From assembly GCF_006345805.1 (NCBI RefSeq), contig NC_043000.1, forward strand, positions 21,266,001 through 21,330,000: a DNA stretch of 64,000 nucleotides. Reading direction: 5' to 3'. The position numbers and the translations under genes were made by a program. The notes beneath the pieces are model-generated. The model saw nothing but the letters and a program-made list of their open reading frames with translations, searched no databases and was not told the DNA's origin. The first letter of the stretch is position 1; each line of letters begins with the position of its first letter. Source of the stretch: Octopus sinensis. Its lineage: Eukaryota. Below, piece by piece: positions 14,744 to 64,000 of the stretch.

Positions 14744-15656
14744 ACGTGCGCACGCACTCAGCTACGTACACACATCTCGTCTTCGTGTTTTCTTCAAATT
14801 AACTCTCAAATAAGTGTAAAGGCACGTTCTCCAACCCAGAAAAAAATGTGTGTACATCTAAAAGTAAGCGTGTATGTGTGTGTATACGCAAGTATGCTTT
14901 GTGTGCATTTACGTATATTTGTGCGTGTATATGTGTGGTGTGTGCGTGTGCGCGCGTGCGAGTGCGTGCATGTGCGTGCGTGTGTATATGTTAGACTAGA
15001 CTGAAAGCATTTACAAGCAGATATCAGTTCCTGTAGGCGACTATTCGAAAATACTGCAATTCTAAAATAGTCTTTTTTAATTCCTTACACTGATTGAGCA
15101 TATTTTATTGACATAAATGTACTTTAAAGCTACATTTGTACATAAATTCATACATAGAAATCTTCTTGGTAGACAGAGCTAAGTTCTATTGACAGATTAA
15201 ATTGGTCTCGGACGCCATTTGCATAAGAATTATACAGTTAGGAGAGCGAAAGTATATTTACCGATTAGAATATTAGACAGCTGAAATATATTCACATATA
15301 CAGCAGAAAAAAAAGGAAAATAATGTTGGATGATTCTTAATATCATTTATATCTTTTTATCGGCAAGTATAGGATAAAAACTTTGGGCAAATTTTCGTTC
15401 TTTTTTAAGGCTTTTCGCTGAAACGTAGCCTTTCTGTAATATGCGGGGTGTCAGCAAAGAGTAACTCGTTTGTGATTTGCTGAAGCATTAGCTAGCAAGC
15501 AGATATGGCCAATGTATCAGAGAGTTACCTTCCCTTGACTTAAGAGCTTTTATAACAAAGTGAAATTCGTGCGGTGTTGTACTTGCCAATAAAAAAGAAA
15601 TCCAGAAATATTATTTATTGACTACATTTTGTTTTCTTTTGCCAAACATACAAATG

Positions 15657-16090
15657 GGATCTTTTCGGTTTGAACTACAGTTTTTTTCTAGCGGTATCAT
15701 ATGAAATTGTCACCCATAATTATGACCCTGGTATCGATCTATTGCATTTCAATCTCTTTTAGTGTTAGGGTTAGTTAGGGTTAGGGTTAGGGGTGGGGGA
15801 AGGGTATTTTTTTTCTTCACAAATGTAAATAAACCCAATCTGTTTCTTAAACGAGGGACATATTCATACGGCACAGAATGTTTTTTACCTCTATATACGT
15901 CAGTGATTGATTGAAATTGCAGAAATTGAAGAAGAAAAAAACAACAAATATCTTACAAACTATAGAATTTTCTTAATAAAGCCAAGAGAAAAAGATGTTT
16001 TATAAACACATTCTACCAGTATACGAAGTTTAAAATTTTTTAGTTACGTGGGAATTATGTTAAAAACTGCCGTTCAAGCCGAAAAGATCC
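15657..16090. mobile_element. MITE with ~29-bp TIR (GGATCTTTTCGG...), copy 1
   Basis: TIRs at both ends; inverted homolog of 22315-22754; flanked by a 30-bp direct repeat. Confidence 0.9.
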
Positions 16091-16597
16091 TTTTGTTTTC
16101 TTTTGCCAAACATACAAATGTACATTAGCGTGTGCAAGAGAAAGAGAGAGAAAGAGAAAGGAGAGAGTGAAAAAAGAGAAAGAGAAAATGTGTGTGTGCA
16201 TGTGTGTGTACGAACAAATGAATACCATGTGAGCAGGGTTTTTTTCCCACACTCTCCTATACACAAACTTATATCAAACCGTTGTATTCATTCGATTATG
16301 TATTGTTAGTAATGTTGTTAGTATTGTTATCATAAGGTATTATCCAACCCATCCGTAAGTTCTAGGACATAAATTATGACATCATGCTACTTGAAGCGTG
16401 ACGTAAATGTTAAAATCAAGCTAGTTTAAGTACAATATAAATGGTTAATATTACACTCTTTTAAGTGCGATATAAATGGTTAGCATTAAGTTAAAGTGCG
16501 GCTGTTATTTAATTATTTATGCAGTTGGGGTACTAATTACACAGTTTTCTAAAGACTCATCAGAGACATGTAAACAGAAATATTTTCAATAATGTAC

Positions 16598-19449: not shown

Positions 19450-19880
19450 CTAGGCGAACTGGTAGAATCATTAGTGTGTCGAACAAAATGATTAGGGACT
19501 TAGTAGTATTTCGTCTGCCGCTACGTTCTGAGTTCAAATTCCGCTGAGGTCAACTTTGCTTTTCACCCTTTCGGGGTCGATTAAATAAGTACCAGTTACG
19601 CACTGGGATCGATATAATCGACTTAATCCGTTTGTCTGTCCTTGTTTGTCCTCTCTGTATTTAGCCCCTTGTGGGTAGTAAATAAATAGAAATAGGTATT
19701 TCGTCTGCTGTTACGTTCTGAGTTCAAATTCCGCCGAGGTCGACTTTGCCTTTCATCCTTTCGAGGTCGATAAATTAAGTACCAGTTATTCACTGGCGTC
19801 GATGTAATCGACTTAATCCATTTGTCTGTCCCTGTTTGTCCCCTCTATGTTTAGCCCCTTGTGGGCAATAAAGAAATAAG
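19450..19880 (+). mobile_element. SINE family A with tandemly repeated 3' body
   Basis: The tail gaaata is joined to the internal ggtatttcgtct at ~19695. Confidence 0.85.
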
Positions 19881-20193
19881 AATAAAGTACCAGGCTGAAA
19901 AAAATATAAGTTTTAGGATCGATCCGTTCGGCTAAATATACTCCAAGGTGGTGCTGCAGAATCGCCGCAGTCTAATGAATGAAACAAACGATAAAAGATG
20001 CAAGAATAGAGCTATAAAAAATGACATATTTTTCATCTTAAATCAAATGACAAAGGAAAGGATTGAAATGAATAAGAAAGAACGAATGAATTTATCTAAC
20101 AACACAATATATGCGCGAATTGCGTAGGTGATATTCCATTTATAACATCAAATCCCTTAGAAACATCACACACGTCACTAGATCCAGCCTCAC

Positions 20194-20454: not shown

Positions 20455-21149
20455 AGAAGAAGAGAAGAAGAAGAAGAAGAAGAAGAAGAAGAAGAGAAGA
20501 AGAAGAAGAAATGAACTAAAGATAAATTATTGACGGGTCCATAAATAACTACAGTAAATATTCGTTTTCCAAACAAAAACGTTACAAGATAATGGACGTA
20601 AATAGTTCTACATTGTCCTATATATATTGTGGAATAGAAGCCATCCCAGAAGAGAAAAACTAATCAATGAAATTGGCTTCTAAAGTCTTGGATTTACAAG
20701 AATATAGTAAAATGGACACGGGTTGAACGAAAGCTATATTAGTTAGGTCAATAGTATAAAGTGCAATTATGGCCAGTCACGAACGATGGTCAAGATGTGA
20801 GCATTAATTATTCAAAACTGAAAAGGGATAGGGATCTGGGCATTTTCTTCGACGTAGGTATAATACAGAAGAATAAGAAATGTGTGCAGTGAAATATTTG
20901 TTATATTGCAAAATTGTTTAAGGTCAAGGGGTCCATTTATTTACACTTTGGGAAAGGAATGTGTGTTACAACTACTTATTTCAACGTTTCTTCAAAAATC
21001 TCAAGTTTAATGTCTACGTGGAACAATCAATACTTGTAATTAGAAAACATAAACTCCCCATTTCTATTTAAACATCACATAAATTTCGGGTGCGGTCCCA
21101 GGAATTTTTTCGAAGGGAAGGTACAAGGTCAGATAGGAATACATATTTC

Positions 21150-21368
21150 TTTACTACCGACAAGGGGCCAAACATAGAGAGGACAAACAAGGACAGACAA
21201 ACGGATTAAGTCGATTATATCGACCCCCAGTGCGTAACTGGTACTTATTTAATTGACCCCGAAAGGCAAAGTCGACCTCGGCGGAATTTGAACTCAGAAC
21301 GTAGCGGCAGACGAAATACTGCTAAGCATTTCGCCCGGCGTGCTAACGTTTCTGCCAGCTCGCCGCCT
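21150..21368 (-). mobile_element. SINE family A inserted in a MITE-like element (~21085-21500, related to 29659-29790)
   Basis: ~14-bp imperfect TSD cagat(a/g)ggaataca. The host sequence matches the reverse complement of ~29700-29790. Confidence 0.85.
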
Positions 21369-22080
21369 TTGCCAGATGGGAATACAATTCCAGGAGAAAA
21401 GGGCGTAATAACATTATTTAGAAGGGTGCACTTCTTTTCTTGAGGGAGTAGGGCACGTTCCCCTCAACCACCCCTCTTGAGTTCACCCCCACCCCCGAGT
21501 TTTTATTATTTAGTTGCGACAAATGACTTCACTGACATACTGTATATCTTGAACATTTTTATGTAAACTTGACGGGGCCCCACTGAAGTTGTACTGCCCG
21601 GGGCAGCCTTTGAGTTTGCTCAAGCCTCCGGGAGCCCCAAGCTTATACAGATCTAAAAGCGGAGCCCATCCCTTTCTGGATCTAACTACAGACGATTTCT
21701 TCCAAAAAGAAGTAGAGTGACAAAGCGAAAAGAAGAACTAACACCCGTTCCGGATTGGTAGTTTATTTATCGGCCCTAAAATAATGAAAACTAAAGCTGA
21801 CTCGGAGAAATTTGAACGTATAACGCCGGCAGCCGGAATAAATAATGCAACGTTTCTCTGTACGATGCCCGATTAAACTCAGCAAGCTAGATATAATGAC
21901 AAAATGATGGCAAACTCAGTAAGTTAGACATGATGACAAAATGTGATATATTGATGGGTGAGGAAGAAAAGGGAATTGTAATGGTGTTCATTCCTTTTGT
22001 AAGAGTACTAAAGGTTTAATCGACATGGTTTCAGTTGAAAATCGAAACCGGATTACAGGATCGTTTTTCCCTAAACTTAC

Positions 22081-22151
22081 CACTGCACTACGGCCCCTTC
22101 CAGAATTACCTCACGCGTGACATCCACAGATTCCATATAGTCGACTAAATG
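22081..22151 (-). CDS. Duplicated 71-nt exon, distal copy (HLVDYMESVDVTREVILEGAVVQ)
   Basis: ctcttaattccag| acceptor and |gtaagt donor; open only in frame 0. Confidence 0.55.
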
Positions 22152-22314
22152 CTGGAATTAAGAGATTGTAAAATGATGAATTTAAATTCTGCTTAATAAC
22201 GGTTCTTACTACAGAAAATGAATCCCACATAGCTTATTGAATCTTGTTCTTGAAAATTAGATATTTTCAATTCACGTGGTTTCAGCTGAAAATCGAAACC
22301 GGATTACAGGATCG

Positions 22315-22754
22315 GGATCTTTTCGGTTTGAACGGCAGTTTTTAGCATAATTTCTAGGTAACTAAAAAATTTTAAACTTCGTATACTGGTAGAATGTGTT
22401 TATAAAACATCTTTTTCTCTTGGCTTTATTGAGAAAATTCTATAGTTTGTAAGATATTTGTGTTTTTTTTTCTTCAATTTCTGCAAGTTCAACCAATCAC
22501 TGACGTCCATTGAGGTAAACAACATTCTGTGCCGTATGAATATGTCCCTCGTTTAAGAAACAGATTGGGTTTATTTACATTTGTGAAGAAAAAAAAGATA
22601 CCCTTCCCCCCACCCCTAACCCTAACCCTAACCCTAACTAACCCTAACCCTAAAATAGATTGAAATGCAATAGATCGATACTAGCGTCATAATTATGGGT
22701 GACAATTTCATATGACACCGCTAGAAAAAACTGCCGTTCAAACCGAAAAGATCC
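22315..22754. mobile_element. MITE copy 2, perfect 29-bp TIR, 8-bp TSD (Merlin- or hAT-like)
   Basis: TSD caggatcg at 22307-22314 and 22755-22762. GG termini with an 8-bp TSD fit Merlin/IS1016; internal (CCCTAA)n. Confidence 0.9.
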
Positions 22755-22779
22755 CAGGATCGTTTTCCCATAAACTTAC

Positions 22780-22850
22780 CACTGCACTACGGCCCCTTCA
22801 AGAATTACCTCACGCGTGACATCCACAGATTTCATATAGTCGACGAAATG
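22780..22850 (-). CDS. Duplicated 71-nt exon, proximal copy (HFVDYMKSVDVTREVILEGAVVQ)
   Basis: Same acceptor and |gtaagt donor as the distal copy; phase 0 to 2. Confidence 0.55.
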
Positions 22851-23090
22851 CTGGAATTAAGAGATTGTAAAATGATGAATTTAAATTCTGCTTAATAACT
22901 GTTCTTACTACAGAAAATGAATCCCACACAGCTTATTGAATCTTGTTCTTGAAAATTAGATATTTGTTCAGCAGAGATCGATACAAGCAGCAACATATTC
23001 TTCTCGTGCTCTACAACAAAACGGAGGCTCCGATGACGACGACCGACTATAAATGGCGACCGTCCTATCTTTCAAAATAGATATAATTAC

Positions 23091-23209
23091 TTTCATGTAA
23101 CGAATTAGGGTACGATCTTGAAACGGATATAAATCAAAACTATGCTTCAAAATATTCTTTCTATATTCATTCATCATGGCCGCCAGTTTCTTTGAATCAT
23201 CTGCTACAT
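23091..23209 (-). CDS. Candidate exon (VADDSKKLAAMMNEYRKNILKHSFDLYPFQDRTLIRYMK)
   Basis: Open frame ending at aaa|gtaatt. The acceptor is weak (aataag| or gtagcag|), or this is a first exon starting at gcggccATG. Confidence 0.5.
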
Positions 23210-24798: not shown

Positions 24799-26070
24799 GG
24801 ATTGGACAAAATAATGGAAACACCTTGAAATTTCAAATAAATTTATTTTAATATGGGGTAGGACCGCCTTTGGTAGTAATTACAGCTTGAAATCTTCGAA
24901 GTATGAACTCGTACAAAGTTTAAATTGTTTCCGAAGGAATTTTTGTCCATTCTTCAGCTAAAACAGTCTACAGTTCTTGTAGTGATGATGGTGGAGGATT
25001 TCGACTCCTTAATTGTTTTTTTAAATGCACCATAAATGTTCAATAATATTGAGATCTGAGGACTGTGGTGGCCAGGTAAGATGTTCAACTTCACTAGAGT
25101 GTTCCTCGTGCCATTCAGTAATAACTTTACCTGTGTGAATTGGTGCATTATCATCCTGAAAGATTGCGTTTCCCTCCGAAAACAGTTCCGCAACCATATG
25201 ATGAATTTGATTAGATAAAATGCTTAAACAGTCTTGACTATTAATTCTGCCATGAAGGGAAACCATTGGGCCGGCGGATTTCCAAGATATAGCCCCCAAA
25301 TCATCACAGATCCTCCTCCATCTTTAACAGTTGGAATAAGGCAGTCCGGGTCAAATGCTGCTTTTGTCTTTTTCCACACATACACTCGGCCGATGGTTGG
25401 AAATAAAGTAAAAAATGACTCGTCCGAGAAAGTAACTCTCTTCCACTGCTCTAGGGACCAATTCTGTAGGTTTTTACTCCACTCTTTGCAACGTTTGTTT
25501 TTGAAAGCAGTGGTTTTCTGATTGCAACCCTCCCATGAAATCCGACTTTGTGCTGCTCCCACTGAACAGCTTTTGTGGAAACTGGGTTCTCAAGGTAGTC
25601 ATTAAGCTCTGCAGTCATTTTAGGATCTATACTTTTGTGATCCTTTCTAACAATTAGCGTAAGATTCCGACGATCGCTATCTGAAAGTTTTGGTTTTCCT
25701 CCGGAGTTTTGTTTCAACGAGGAGGTTCTTTTCCTTCTTTCTCAAAGGCTGTCATTACTTTCGAGACAGTACGTCTTGATACAGCAAACATTTCGGCTGT
25801 TTTCGTTGCGCTAGCGCCTACCATACGAGCATCAACAATTTGACCTCTTTGAAAGTCTGATAGATCTGTCATTTTAATGAATTTTAATTACCTTTTTCTG
25901 ATGATATCTGAAAAGAAACATCAATTTTAGCAAAACGTATACAACGTTATTAGCAACACTAATAACAAATCAAAAACCATAAAAATAAACAAGCTTTTGA
26001 CGGTTTTCTAGATATATCAAAATTATGATATTATGATGCCAGGTGTTTCCATTATTTTGTCCAACCCCTG
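24796..26070 (-). mobile_element. Tc1-family (DD34E-type) transposon, full length, frameshifted
   Basis: TIR caggg(g)(a/t)tggacaaaataatggaaacacct, TA flanks. Transposase 25872-24848 with FSDES, GGSVMIWG, FQDDNAPIH and WPPQSSDLNIIEHLW. Confidence 0.95.
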
Positions 26071-26556: not shown

Positions 26557-27812
26557 GTTGGTGCAAAAGTAATGCCCGATTTCTAGAAAAAATGTTTCAG
26601 AGAGAGAATTTATCAATTTTTTTACCTTTTGTTATAGTTTTAAGATATCTCTGTTTCTAATTTGTACTATTTTCTTTCAGATTATCTAACTTCTGGCCAT
26701 AATTCTCAGAAAATGTTACCACCTTGTTTCTCCCATCTAAATATCACATAAGAAATATTTTACTCTACGAGTTTCATAAAGGTTTTAATGCAAGTGCGGC
26801 AGCAAGATCCATTCAGAGCACTTATGAGGATGATGTAGTGAATGAAAGAAGTTGTAGGAGGTGGTTTTCCCGTCCCCAAAGTGGTGGTTTCACTTTGAAA
26901 GTAGAGCCAAAAGAGTATCGTCCAAAAAAAAATTGATTCCGAAATGTTGGAACTCTTGTTTCAGAGAACCCTATCGTTACCACTAGGGAACTTGCAGAAC
27001 AGTTAAACGTGGCCCATACAACCGTGGTACGCCAGCTAAAACACATTGGAAAGGTTTCAGTGGCTGGGAAACGGGTCCCTCATGAGCTGTCTCCAGAGAA
27101 ACGACTACAGCGTGCTGCTTGTTGTCAATCATCAAACAACATTTTTAGACAGGCTTGTTACAAGTGATGTGAAATAGATTCGTTACCATAATATTAAACG
27201 CCGCCGTTCTTGGATGAGTCGAGGAGGATGGCCAGTTCAACAACAGAGAGCAGGATTTCATCCAAAGAAAATCATATTGAGTGTATGGTGGGATATTAAA
27301 GGAGTAATCCATTATGAACTGTGGACAACAACCAAGCAATTAATGCTAATCTTTACTGTGAGCAACTTCGTCCTTTGAAAACAGTTCTGAGCCAAAAGCG
27401 AGCGTCCTTGGTTAACAGAAAAGGTGCCATCTTCCATCGCGATAATGCTCGTCTTCACACAGCTCGACTGATCAAAACTCTCTTGGAAGAACTTAATTGG
27501 GAAATACTGCCTCATCCTCCATATTCTCCTGACCTTACTCCTTCTGATTACCATTTGTTCCGAGGACTACAGAACCATTTTGATGGACTTAGGTTAACAA
27601 CAAGAGAAAAGAATGAAAATGAGTTGGATTCATATTTTGGTTCTAAATCTACAGAATTTTACAAGCGAGGCATTTATAAGGTTGTTGAAAGATGGAATGG
27701 GGTGATTGAAAGCAATGGAGAGTATGTTAATGAATAGATATTTCCATAGTCATTGGTTTATTCCTTTTTGCCTTAGATCTTTAAATCGGACATTACTTTT
27801 TCACCAACCTGA
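26553..27812 (+). mobile_element. mariner (DD34D) transposon, full length, decayed
   Basis: TIR tcaggttggtg(c/a)aaaagtaatg(c/t)ccgattt; HIRNILLYEF...WVPHEL...FHRDNARLH...HPPYSPDLTPSDYHLF. Confidence 0.95.
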
Positions 27813-29110: not shown

Positions 29111-29901
29111 GGTTACTTGTACGCCATCGGAACCGGGTAAGTGTCCCTCTGAATCCTAGGACTCGAGACAGTACTTACTTTCTTTTTTTTTTTCTTTTTC
29201 TTTTTTTGGCATAGAAAAAAATGGCAAATCATCACCATTACTGAGTCTCCGAGACATGTGAGGAGGAAAGCAAAAGTTATTTTCAAATCGGAGTCTTCGT
29301 TCAAATGCTTACAATAGCGGTCACCATAGGAGACCTGATATGCGCAGTGACGGTGATAGTTTGGTAAAGGTCACATTTTGTGGTGAGAAAGAGTACAAGA
29401 TATTTGAAGTGTCCGTGTGTCGGTTAAGGATGCGTGCAGCGGATGAAATAAATTGATGTAAAGAATAGGGAAATTGTAAGAGATTCGGTTACTACATTAG
29501 CGACACCAGTTCGAAAGGAGTATGGAAGCTGTGAGCATTAAAAGGGGCTGTGAGCATTAAAATTACTGAAGGGTAACTTCAGGTGGTAACTTCACGCCTC
29601 AATGGCAGTGAATTAAAGTAGTTGTCCTTGATGCAGAAAGTGATATAGTTGAACATCCCAGGGGCGGACCCAAGGAGGAGCCTGAGGGGCATGTTCCCCT
29701 GCCTCAAGAATAATGTTATTACGCCCTTTTCTCCTGGAATTGTATTCCCTTCTAACCTTGTGCCCTTCCATCGAAAAATTCCTGGTGATTGCAGAAGTTG
29801 GCGATTGTGTTTGTCCCCCCAACATTTCTTGACAATCGATGTTGGTGTGTTTACGTCAAAAGAGACCGATAGAATAGGTACTAGGCTTACAAAGAATAAG
29901 T

Positions 29902-44224: not shown

Positions 44225-44816
44225 AATATCCTATTTCTTTACTACCCACAAGGGGCTAAACACAGAGAGGACAAACAAGGACAGACAAACGGATTAAGTC
44301 GATTATATCGACCCCAGTGCGTAACTGGTACTTATTTAATCGACCCCCGAAAGAATGAAAGGCGAAGTCGACCTCGGCAGAATTTAAACTCAGAATGTAG
44401 CGGCAGACGAAATACCTATTTTTTTACTACCCACAAGGGGCTAAACACAGAGGGGACAAACAAGGACAGACAAATGGATTAAGTCAATTACATCGACCCC
44501 AGTGCATAACTGGTACTTATTTAATCGACCCTGAAAGAATGAAAGGCAAAGTCGACCTCGGCAGATTTGAACTCAGAATGTAGCGGCAGATGAAATATCT
44601 ACTTCCTTACTACCCACAAGGGACTAAACACAAAGGGGACAAACAAGGACAGACAAATGGATTAAGTTGATTATATCGACCCAAGTGCATAACTGGTACT
44701 TATTTAATCGACCCCGAAAGGATGAAAAGCAAAGTCGACCTCGGCAGAATTTGAACTCAGAACGTAGTGGCAGACGAAATACCACTAAGCATTTCACTCG
44801 GTGCGTTAACGTTTCT
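44225..44816 (-). mobile_element. SINE family A trimer
   Basis: Three bodies joined tail-to-internal-g(g/a)tattt site at ~44415 and ~44597, with a single head. Confidence 0.88.
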
Positions 44817-62139: not shown

Positions 62140-64000
62140 AAGCAAATTACTCTAGTCAACAGCCAATTTTCATCAGGGATATTATATGGTGTTTTATATG
62201 TAGTTTTGTCAGCAGATTTCAAAAATGTAATCGGTTTCCTTCTATCGGGCACAGTTTTTCGGATGAGATAAGAGAGAGGTATATAACTCCCATCAGCAGT
62301 ATCGCTACACGTAAACGTCTTATACAGGTAAATTCTGATTTTTGTTTTATAACTATTTGTATTCATTTTGTAATTTTATGTTTTCATAAGCTTTTCTTTT
62401 CATAAATTTTACTTTCTGTTTAAGGTGCCAAATCATCATCATCATCATCAAATTCTACTCAGAATATCAAGGCATTGCAAGAACAGTCCGGATATATTTT
62501 GTCATGTCTGTGGTTCATTTACCACCAAAACCCAGCAACGTGCCATCACAAGTGAGATCAAGAAGATCTACCAGTTATATTTTGGCTGCTCTCTTGGGGA
62601 TCAAGATAAGGGTCCCGCACATCATCTGCTCAGCTTGTTCAAATGGACTAAGGGATTGGCTAAATAAGAGGAAGAGAGCAATGCCGTTTGTAATGCCTAT
62701 GATATGGAGAGAGCCAAAGGATCATTTCTTGGACTGTTATTTCTGCAACGATAATGTTTGTGAGTTTACTGTAAAGACAAAGCATAAGATTGTGTATCCG
62801 AACTTGGAATCAGCAAGAAGACCAGTATCACACAACGATGATGATCTTCCTATTCCAATACCACCAGAAAATGACGTTCAGATGTCTGACGAAGATGTAT
62901 TTCCTGAAGAAAATACTACTACTGTGGAAGACACCGAAGTGGATGCAGATTTCACGATTGAAAATGAAGACGTACCACAGAAATTTTCTCAAGGAGAGTT
63001 AAATGATTTAGTTAGAAACTTGTCATTGTCGAAGGATAAAGCTGAACTATTACCATCTCGCCTAGAAGAAAAGTGTTTGCTTAAGCAAGATGTTTGTATT
63101 ACTTATTTCAGGAAGAGAAATAGGGATCTGATTTCATGCTTCTCTGTTGATGGACCACTTTGTTTCAGTAATAACACTGATGAGTTATTTCGCTGTTTGT
63201 TCTAAGAGCATGTTCCAGCTGAATGGCGCTTATTCATTGATTCATCTAAGAGAAGCCTCAAGGCAGTACTACTACACAATAAGAAACCATCCATTCCCAT
63301 AGGACATTCGATGCACATGAAGGGTTGTTACAAAAACATGCAAGTACCCCTCAATGCCTTAAAGTATACAAACTACAGCTGGAAAATATGTGGAGACTTT
63401 AAAGGTGATTGGAATGTTGATGGTAATGCAATCTGGGTTCACAAAATATTGTTGCTTTTTTATGCCCATGGGACAGCCGTGCAACTAACAAGCACTATGT
63501 GCAATCAGAGTGGCCTTTGCGAAAATCATATGAGCCGGGCATATTCATAGGTCCACAGATAAAAGAACTCCTGAAGGGCAACCACTTCCTCACAGCACTG
63601 GATGAGACTGAGCTTAAAGTCTGGCAATCCTTCAAATGTCTCTGTGAAAATTTCCTAAGCAACAAGAGATCTCTAGAGTTTAGAAATGGAGTGAAATGTC
63701 TTCTAGACTCCTACGCTGCAATGGGCTGTCGGATGTCCATTTCCTTGATTCACTTCTGGACATTTTTGCAGAGAACCTTGGAGCAGTGTCTGATGAGCAA
63801 GGGGAACGCTTTCATCAAGATATTGCATCGATGGAACAACGATATCAAGGGTTTTGGAATGCAGGAATGTTAGCTGACTACTGTTGGATGTCATACAGGG
63901 ATGAACCTGAGACAAAACACCATAGAAAGTCCAAATCCCAAAGATTTTAAGTTGTTATGCATTTGAATGTATTCTAACTTATATGTAGACAATAATTTTA
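62140..64000 (+). mobile_element. Chapaev (CMC superfamily) transposon, decayed, with internal deletion
   Basis: CKNSPDIFCHVCG...GDQDK..PHIIC...PMIWREPKDH..DCYFC, LSKDKAELL, WRLFIDSSKRSLKAVLLH and ENLGAVSDEQGERFHQDI...RYQG...MLADYCW. The left boundary is uncertain. Confidence 0.88.

What the first reader, a model, noticed from the sequence alone, without database searches (positions are those of the whole stretch)
22026..22965. Tandemly duplicated 71-nt exon, candidate nascent mutually exclusive pair
A ~250-bp unit is duplicated, and both copies keep the acceptor, the GTAAGT donor and an open frame. They differ at F/L and K/E plus one silent site. Since 71 is not divisible by 3, including both shifts the frame, so productive mRNAs should use only one. 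A MITE later inserted ~25 bp from the proximal donor and stretched the intervening intron from ~190 to 628 nt.
Basis: partly seen in the sequence, partly recalled or inferred. Interest (0 to 1): 0.7.

Follow-up and report, generated by a model that had tools for sequence, protein, structure and literature searches.

The report
Duplicated 251-bp segment with transposon insertion
A 251-bp stretch of transposon-rich, octopus-like DNA was duplicated in tandem and one copy was later hit by a small transposon; the "exon" seen in each copy has no support beyond what chance gives, so this is most likely ordinary non-coding structural change and not a new pair of alternative exons.

Summary
The sequence description is correct. 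A 251-bp unit lies head to tail (22015-22265; 22266-22314 plus 22763-22965). A 440-bp element with 29-nt perfect inverted ends and an 8-bp target duplication sits in the second copy. The first copy preserves the empty site, and a 93% identical element lies at 15657-16090. On the minus strand each copy carries a 71-nt open frame between CAG and GTAAGT. The copies differ by F/L, K/E and one silent change, and joining both gives an immediate stop.

The exon reading failed every test I could run:
- The segment diverged as fast as its flanks (3/71 vs 10/180, p=1.0), with the neutral ratio of amino-acid changes.
- Neutral drift keeps all the signals in both copies 59% of the time.
- Equally exon-like segments occur 9 times in the window, against 10.8±3 in shuffled sequence.
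- The frame is only 26 codons from stop to stop.
- Neither the peptide nor any nearby minus-strand ORF of 33 aa or more (16.1-24.7 kb) matches any of 5.8 billion proteins, although Octopus bimaculoides RefSeq proteins are in that set.

The only point in favour is higher GC (48-49% vs 31%). I rate a real mutually exclusive pair at about 4%. RNA-seq would settle it.

The parts
22015..22265 (.). Copy 1 of the 251-bp tandem unit, without the insert; it preserves the empty target site CAGGATCG at 22056-22063
22266..22314 (.). Copy 2, left part (unit positions 1-49), ending in the left target-site duplication CAGGATCG (22307-22314)
22315..22754 (.). 440-bp non-coding TIR element (MITE-like). It has 29-nt perfect terminal inverted repeats (22315-22343 and 22726-22754) and an internal (CCCTAA)n tract at 22614-22653
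22755..22965 (.). Copy 2, right part (unit positions 42-251), starting with the right target-site duplication CAGGATCG (22755-22762)
22081..22151 (-). Exon-like 71-nt open frame in copy 1 (HLVDYMESVDVTREVILEGAVVQ). AG at 22152-22153 and GTAAGT at 22075-22080, minus strand. Most likely a pseudo-exon
22780..22850 (-). Exon-like 71-nt open frame in copy 2 (HFVDYMKSVDVTREVILEGAVVQ). AG at 22851-22852 and GTAAGT at 22774-22779, minus strand. Most likely a pseudo-exon
15657..16090 (.). Second copy of the same TIR element, in opposite orientation and about 93% identical. It shows that the insert is a mobile repeat family

Best explanation
This is a short tandem duplication of non-coding DNA followed by a transposon insertion, in a transposon-rich, octopus-like genomic region.

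Step 1 (shown). A 251-bp segment was copied head to tail. The junction has only a few bases of shared sequence (TTT) and about 11 poorly matched bases, as expected from replication slippage or end-joining (inferred mechanism).

Step 2 (shown). After the duplication, a 440-bp non-autonomous element with 29-nt inverted ends inserted into unit position 42-49 of one copy and duplicated 8 bp of target. The other copy is the untouched empty site.

Step 3 (inferred). The 71-nt open frame flanked by CAG and GTAAGT on the minus strand is a pseudo-exon, a chance combination of splice-like signals. It was carried along by the duplication and has since drifted neutrally in both copies. No mutually exclusive splicing takes place because the segments are not used as exons.
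For: Duplication and insert.

Neutral drift: 3/71 differences in the segment against 10/180 in the rest of the unit, Fisher p=1.0. Two amino-acid changes to one silent change, where 75% amino-acid changes are expected without selection.

Retention of AG, GTAAGT and the open frame in both copies occurs in 59% of neutral simulations at the observed divergence.

Background: 9 segments in the window meet the same criteria (pyrimidine-rich tract, AG, 50-200 nt open, GTAAGT), and 3 of them are at this locus. Shuffled sequence gives 10.75±3.0.

The open frame is bounded by TAA three codons upstream and TAA two codons downstream, 26 codons in all (read).

No homologue:
- no candidate protein shares even three 5-residue words with the query.
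- 1.84 billion representatives read by phmmer gave one hit. It is a tandem-repeat protein matching 14 residues of my own tentative upstream ORF five times, not the duplicated segment.
- all minus-strand ORFs of 33 aa or more from 16.1 to 24.7 kb, plus both exon-like ORFs, gave nothing at E≤0.001.
- no meaningful Pfam hit; the one match is far below the curated cut-off (E=0.07, 13.8 vs 27.3 bits).
- The protein set does contain Octopus bimaculoides RefSeq proteins, so the absence carries weight.

Surroundings: SINE copies, Tc1/mariner remnants and microsatellites. No recognisable cellular gene appears in any long ORF.
Against: The 71-nt segment has 48-49% GC against 31% in the rest of the unit. 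That puts it in the top 11% of 71-nt windows. Its CpG observed/expected ratio is 1.08 against 0.60 for the window. This is the kind of contrast real exons show against AT-rich introns.

The donor is a perfect G|GTAAGT and the acceptor has a reasonable pyrimidine tract.

An upstream ORF starts at GCGGCCATGATG and can end at AAA|GTAATT in phase 0, which fits the segment's frame. I found it by looking for it, and its GC is only 28%.

I had no transcript data. The species and its annotation status are inferred, not known. Lineage-specific or non-coding exons would escape every protein search.
Confidence: 0.85

Rival explanations
1. The segments are real exons of an unannotated, lineage-specific gene on the minus strand. 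A tandem exon duplication created a young mutually exclusive pair. Because 71 is not a multiple of 3, transcripts with both copies hit a stop (TGC ATT TAG) and are removed by nonsense-mediated decay.
For: Both copies keep CAG, G|GTAAGT and one open frame. Double inclusion gives an immediate stop (read). GC and CpG are raised relative to the flanks. A phase-compatible upstream ORF with an ATG exists. Frame incongruity with NMD is a recognised way to enforce exclusivity (PMC7969005, section 29).
Against: There is no excess conservation and the ratio of amino-acid to silent changes is neutral. Retention of the signals is expected by default. Such segments occur at the chance rate. No homologous or annotated protein was found, although octopus proteins are in the set. 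No single-copy sequence of 10 nt or more is complementary to a duplicated intronic arm, as a docking/selector structure would require. Folding energy is ordinary, z=0.18.
Confidence: 0.04
2. One or both segments are spliced, but as part of a non-coding or nonsense transcript (lncRNA exon, UTR exon or poison exon). The duplication then has no protein-level consequence and exclusivity does not arise.
For: The splice-like signals are strong and GC is raised. No protein homology exists, which fits a non-coding exon as well as no exon.
Against: The same background argument applies: the signals occur at the chance rate. There is no extra conservation and no Rfam family in the window.
Confidence: 0.08
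3. The duplication is an assembly artefact, such as two haplotypes laid side by side or a mis-join, and is not present in the genome.
For: None found. It cannot be excluded without reads.
Against: The window has no N. The copies differ at 13 positions and by a 448-bp insertion with a clean 8-bp target duplication. The junction lies inside continuous unique sequence. Haplotype duplication usually involves whole contigs, not 251 bp (my own knowledge).
Confidence: 0.03

Closest known systems
Mutually exclusive exon pairs that arose by tandem exon duplication (for example OGDH 4a/4b, PMC7969005; ATE1 7a/7b, PMC7797038; the competing RNA-structure model of PMC6071210)
   Same: Two adjacent, equal-length (71 nt), about 96% identical segments with the same splice-like borders. 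The length is not a multiple of 3, so joint inclusion breaks the frame. The duplicated unit includes flanking 'intron', as in the model where duplication creates selector sequences.
   Different: There is no evidence that the segments are exons at all. There is no conservation above the flanks, no homologous protein and no docking/selector complementarity. Established pairs are ancient, conserved and lie within recognisable genes.
Pseudo-exons: intronic or intergenic segments with good splice-site matches that are never spliced (described for human genes; my own knowledge, not checked here)
   Same: Good AG and GTAAGT matches around a short open frame. The frequency equals that in shuffled sequence. 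Evolution is neutral.
   Different: It happens to be duplicated, and its GC and CpG content are above the local background.
MITE-type non-autonomous DNA transposons with 8-bp target duplications (hAT, P and Merlin superfamilies make 8-bp duplications; my own knowledge)
   Same: 440 bp, no coding capacity, 29-nt perfect terminal inverted repeats, an 8-bp target duplication verified against an empty paralogous site, and a second copy in the window.
   Different: The ends (GGATCTTTTCGG...) do not resemble the hAT termini I know. The second copy is flanked by a perfect 30-bp direct repeat, not 8 bp, so the superfamily is open.

Membership tests
Mutually exclusive exon pair from tandem exon duplication | Both units are real exons, spliced into transcripts of a gene | not testable with these tools
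   No transcript data were available. Indirect tests are negative: no protein contains the peptide, and the signals occur at the chance rate.
Mutually exclusive exon pair from tandem exon duplication | Adjacent homologous units of equal length and the same phase | tested here: met
   71 nt each, the same open frame, 3 differences.
Mutually exclusive exon pair from tandem exon duplication | A mechanism that enforces exclusivity (frame break with NMD, short intron or steric block, competing RNA structures, U2/U12 incompatibility) | tested here: inconclusive
   The frame break is present: 142 nt, with an immediate TAG. The intron of 180 nt (now 628 nt) is too long for a steric block. No docking/selector complementarity of 10 nt or more. 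Both donors are U2-type GTAAGT.
Mutually exclusive exon pair from tandem exon duplication | Coding sequence under purifying selection relative to the flanking intron | tested here: not met
   3/71 vs 10/180 differences, p=1.0. Two amino-acid changes to one silent change, which is the neutral expectation. The counts are small, so power is low.
MITE / non-autonomous TIR DNA transposon | Terminal inverted repeats | tested here: met
   29-30 nt, 100% complementary.
MITE / non-autonomous TIR DNA transposon | Target-site duplication, with an empty site for comparison | tested here: met
   CAGGATCG lies on both sides of the insert and once in copy 1.
MITE / non-autonomous TIR DNA transposon | Multiple dispersed copies, small size, no transposase | tested here: met
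   A second copy at 15657-16090, 93% identical. The element is 440 bp and contains only short ORFs.
hAT superfamily (as the source of the MITE) | A constant 8-bp target duplication and hAT-type termini | tested here: inconclusive
   8 bp at this copy, but a 30-bp flanking repeat at the other copy. No autonomous partner was found in the window.

The most novel reading that the evidence does not exclude
An unannotated, octopus-lineage-specific gene starts near 23172 (minus strand). Its second coding exon was duplicated recently enough that the two copies still differ by only two amino acids. That would be a mutually exclusive pair caught at birth, policed only by frame-shift and NMD, with a MITE already lengthening the intervening intron and placing a 29-bp perfect RNA duplex 25 nt from the upstream donor.
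Probability: 0.04. Interest if true: 0.55.

Novelty: already known. Interest (0 to 1): 0.1.

Why it matters
As it stands it matters little. Short tandem duplications and MITE insertions are routine in transposon-rich animal genomes.

It is a useful caution for the scan. At 5% divergence a duplicated pseudo-exon keeps its splice-like signals and open frame more often than not, so "both copies kept them" is not evidence of function.

If RNA data showed both copies spliced, it would be one of the youngest mutually exclusive pairs known. It would be a natural test of whether frame-shift plus NMD alone can carry a pair through its first stage.

Tried and rejected
1. Building a gene model. I found an upstream minus-strand ORF (ATG about 23172, possible donor AAA|GTAATT about 23092, phase 0) and joined it to the segment. 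Pfam, the word-index search and exhaustive phmmer gave nothing real. The single phmmer hit, P0001, is a tandem-repeat protein matching 14 residues five times. I reject it as a chance match inflated by the repeats.

2. Exact look-up of the 69-aa read-through ORF and of a 233-aa ORF, to locate the source contig and its gene calls. Neither is on record.

3. Pfam on whole translated frames by DNA reference. I scanned selected ORFs instead and found no family near the locus.

4. A scan of metagenome contigs for a 26-nt core of the segment: 0 matches.

5. RNA-level explanations. No Rfam family or tRNA in the window. The fold of the unit is ordinary, z=0.18. No docking/selector arms.

6. The idea that the whole 251-bp duplication is an oversized target duplication of the insert. 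Rejected, because the 49 nt left of the insert match the start of copy 1 (90%) and not the sequence that follows copy 2.

7. The idea that the unit is a dispersed repeat. No other copy exists in the window. The rest of the genome could not be searched.

Full report
**What is in the sequence**

The window is AT-rich (38% GC) and full of repeats. It carries a SINE family with 14 or more copies, Tc1/mariner remnants and many microsatellites. It has no Rfam family, no tRNA and no N.

A transposon-like ORF at 62504-63205 is 89% identical over part of its length to an Octopus bimaculoides RefSeq protein. The DNA is therefore most likely from an octopus. This is an inference, not a known fact.

**The duplication**

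At 22015-22965 a 251-bp unit is repeated head to tail.
- Copy 1 is 22015-22265.
- Copy 2 is 22266-22314 and 22763-22965, interrupted by an insert.
- With the insert and one target duplication removed, the copies align end to end with 12 substitutions and one 1-nt indel.
- Five of the 13 differences fall in the first 21 nt, so the junction is slightly ragged. The only clear shared sequence at the breakpoints is TTT.
- The unit has no other copy in the window.

**The insert**

The insert at 22315-22754 is 440 bp.
- It has 29-nt perfect inverted ends and an internal telomere-like (CCCTAA)n tract.
- The 8-bp CAGGATCG flanks it on both sides.
- Copy 1 carries CAGGATCG once at the homologous place (22056-22063). 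It is the empty site, so the insertion came after the duplication.
- A second element, about 93% identical and in the opposite orientation, lies at 15657-16090. The insert therefore belongs to a mobile family of MITE type.

**The exon-like segments**

These are on the minus strand, at 22081-22151 and 22780-22850.
- Each is 71 nt, preceded by ...CTCTTAATTCCAG and followed by GTAAGT.
- One frame is open. The three differences give L/F, E/K and a silent CTG/CTT.
- Reading both copies in series gives ...CAG TGC ATT TAG.
- The insert begins 25 nt beyond the GT of the upstream copy.

**Is it an exon? Tests within the sequence**

*Selection.* There are 3 differences in 71 nt of the segment and 10 in the other 180 nt of the unit (4.2% vs 5.6%, Fisher p=1.0). 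Two of the three are amino-acid changes, and 75% is expected with no selection.

*Retention.* I scattered the observed number of substitutions at random over two copies of the unit. AG, GTAAGT and the open frame survived in both copies in 59% of 20,000 runs, or 72% if only GT is required. That both copies "keep" the signals is therefore uninformative.

*Background.* I counted segments with a pyrimidine-rich tract, AG, 50-200 open nucleotides and GTAAGT.
- The window has 9 on both strands, and 3 of them are at this locus.
- Shuffled sequence gives 10.75±3.0.

*Length of the frame.* It runs only 26 codons, from a TAA three codons before the segment to a TAA two codons after it. At this base composition about one frame in six stays open that long (my own calculation).

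*In favour.* The segment has 48-49% GC against 31% for the rest of the unit, which is the top 11% of 71-nt windows. Its CpG observed/expected ratio is 1.08 against 0.60. This is the only intrinsic feature that leans towards an exon.

**Is it an exon? Tests against protein databases**

I looked for a gene around the segment. Upstream on the minus strand an ORF starts at GCGGCCATGATG (about 23172). It can end in phase 0 at AAA|GTAATT (about 23092), which would join in frame to the segment. Its GC is only 28%.

Searches with the joined 52-aa product:
- No meaningful Pfam match; the only one, for the copy-1 version, is DUF6376 at E=0.07, well below its curated cut-off.
- No protein among 5.8 billion shares even three 5-residue words with it.
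- Only one hit among 1.84 billion representatives read in full by phmmer. That hit is a 355-aa tandem-repeat protein. A 14-residue stretch of it (NILKHRFEIYTFWD) resembles the upstream ORF, not the duplicated segment, and it scores only because it recurs five times.

A second search used all 23 minus-strand ORFs of 33 aa or more between 16.1 and 24.7 kb, together with both exon-like ORFs. Nothing reached E≤0.001.

Octopus bimaculoides RefSeq proteins are in that database. An annotated exon of this or a closely related species should therefore have been found.

Exact look-ups of two window ORFs found no recorded gene call, so I could not retrieve an annotated contig.

**Mechanisms of exclusivity, if they were exons**

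- The frame break is real.
- The pre-insertion interval of 180 nt is too long for a steric block.
- Both donors are U2-type.
- I found no sequence outside the duplication that is complementary to a duplicated arm. The model in which tandem duplication creates competing selector sequences would predict one (PMC6071210).
- The unit folds no better than shuffled sequence (z=0.18).
- The recognised enforcing mechanisms are listed in PMC7969005.

**Conclusion**

The best-supported account is a microhomology-type tandem duplication of 251 bp of non-coding DNA. It was later hit by a 440-bp TIR element, and a chance pseudo-exon was carried along.

My rough weighing for a real coding exon runs as follows:
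- The chance background is about ten look-alikes per 64 kb, against fewer than one real exon expected to meet the same strict criteria. That expectation is my own estimate from general octopus gene density.
- The GC contrast raises the odds.
- The absence from protein sets and the neutral divergence lower them again.
- The result is about 5% for a real coding exon.

My probabilities for the alternatives:
- functioning mutually exclusive pair: about 4%;
- non-coding spliced exon: about 8%;
- assembly artefact: about 3%.

None of this can be closed without transcript data.

**Novelty and interest**

Tandem duplications, MITE insertions and pseudo-exons are all familiar. Interest is low (0.1).

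Noticed in passing
window 15627-15656 and 16091-16120 (flanking the element at 15657-16090): The second copy of the TIR element is flanked by a perfect 30-bp direct repeat (TTTTGTTTTCTTTTGCCAAACATACAAATG). The copy at 22315-22754 has an 8-bp target duplication. Two such different lengths for one element family are unusual for cut-and-paste transposons.
   Followed up: partly
window 22614-22653 and about 15760-15795: Both copies of the TIR element carry an internal telomere-like (CCCTAA)n tract next to a C-rich run.
   Followed up: no
window 62504-63205 (+), continuing in shifted frames to about 63950: A 233-aa ORF of a transposon-like protein with no Pfam domain. It is 74% identical to a protein of the prawn Macrobrachium rosenbergii and 89% (partial) to an Octopus bimaculoides protein. 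Relatives also occur in a sponge, aphids, spiders and a mantis shrimp. The patchy, high-identity spread suggests horizontal transfer of a mobile element.
   Followed up: partly
window 19453-19987, 21130-21369, 44229-44816 and at least 10 other places: A roughly 190-240-bp SINE-like repeat is present in 14 or more copies at 77-93% identity, including head-to-tail dimers at 19499-19884 and 44229-44816. ARAGORN and Rfam do not recognise a tRNA-like head.
   Followed up: no
window 25024-25887 (-) and 26703-27734 (+): Two decayed Tc1/mariner transposase remnants lie side by side in opposite orientation. Pfam gives DDE_3 (E=9e-11 and 1e-5) and the Mos1 HTH_48 domain (E=3e-16).
   Followed up: yes
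window 21374-21418 and 29709-29753: A 45-bp stretch is 98% identical in inverted orientation, next to SINE copies at both places. It is probably part of a longer composite repeat.
   Followed up: no
window 22039-22063 vs 22740-22762: The target region of the insertion (AATCGAAACCGGATTACAGGATCG) resembles the element's own terminus plus target duplication (AAACCGAAAAGATCCCAGGATCG). BLAST extends the copy 1 / copy 2 alignment 15 nt into the element end. This could be target preference or chance.
   Followed up: no
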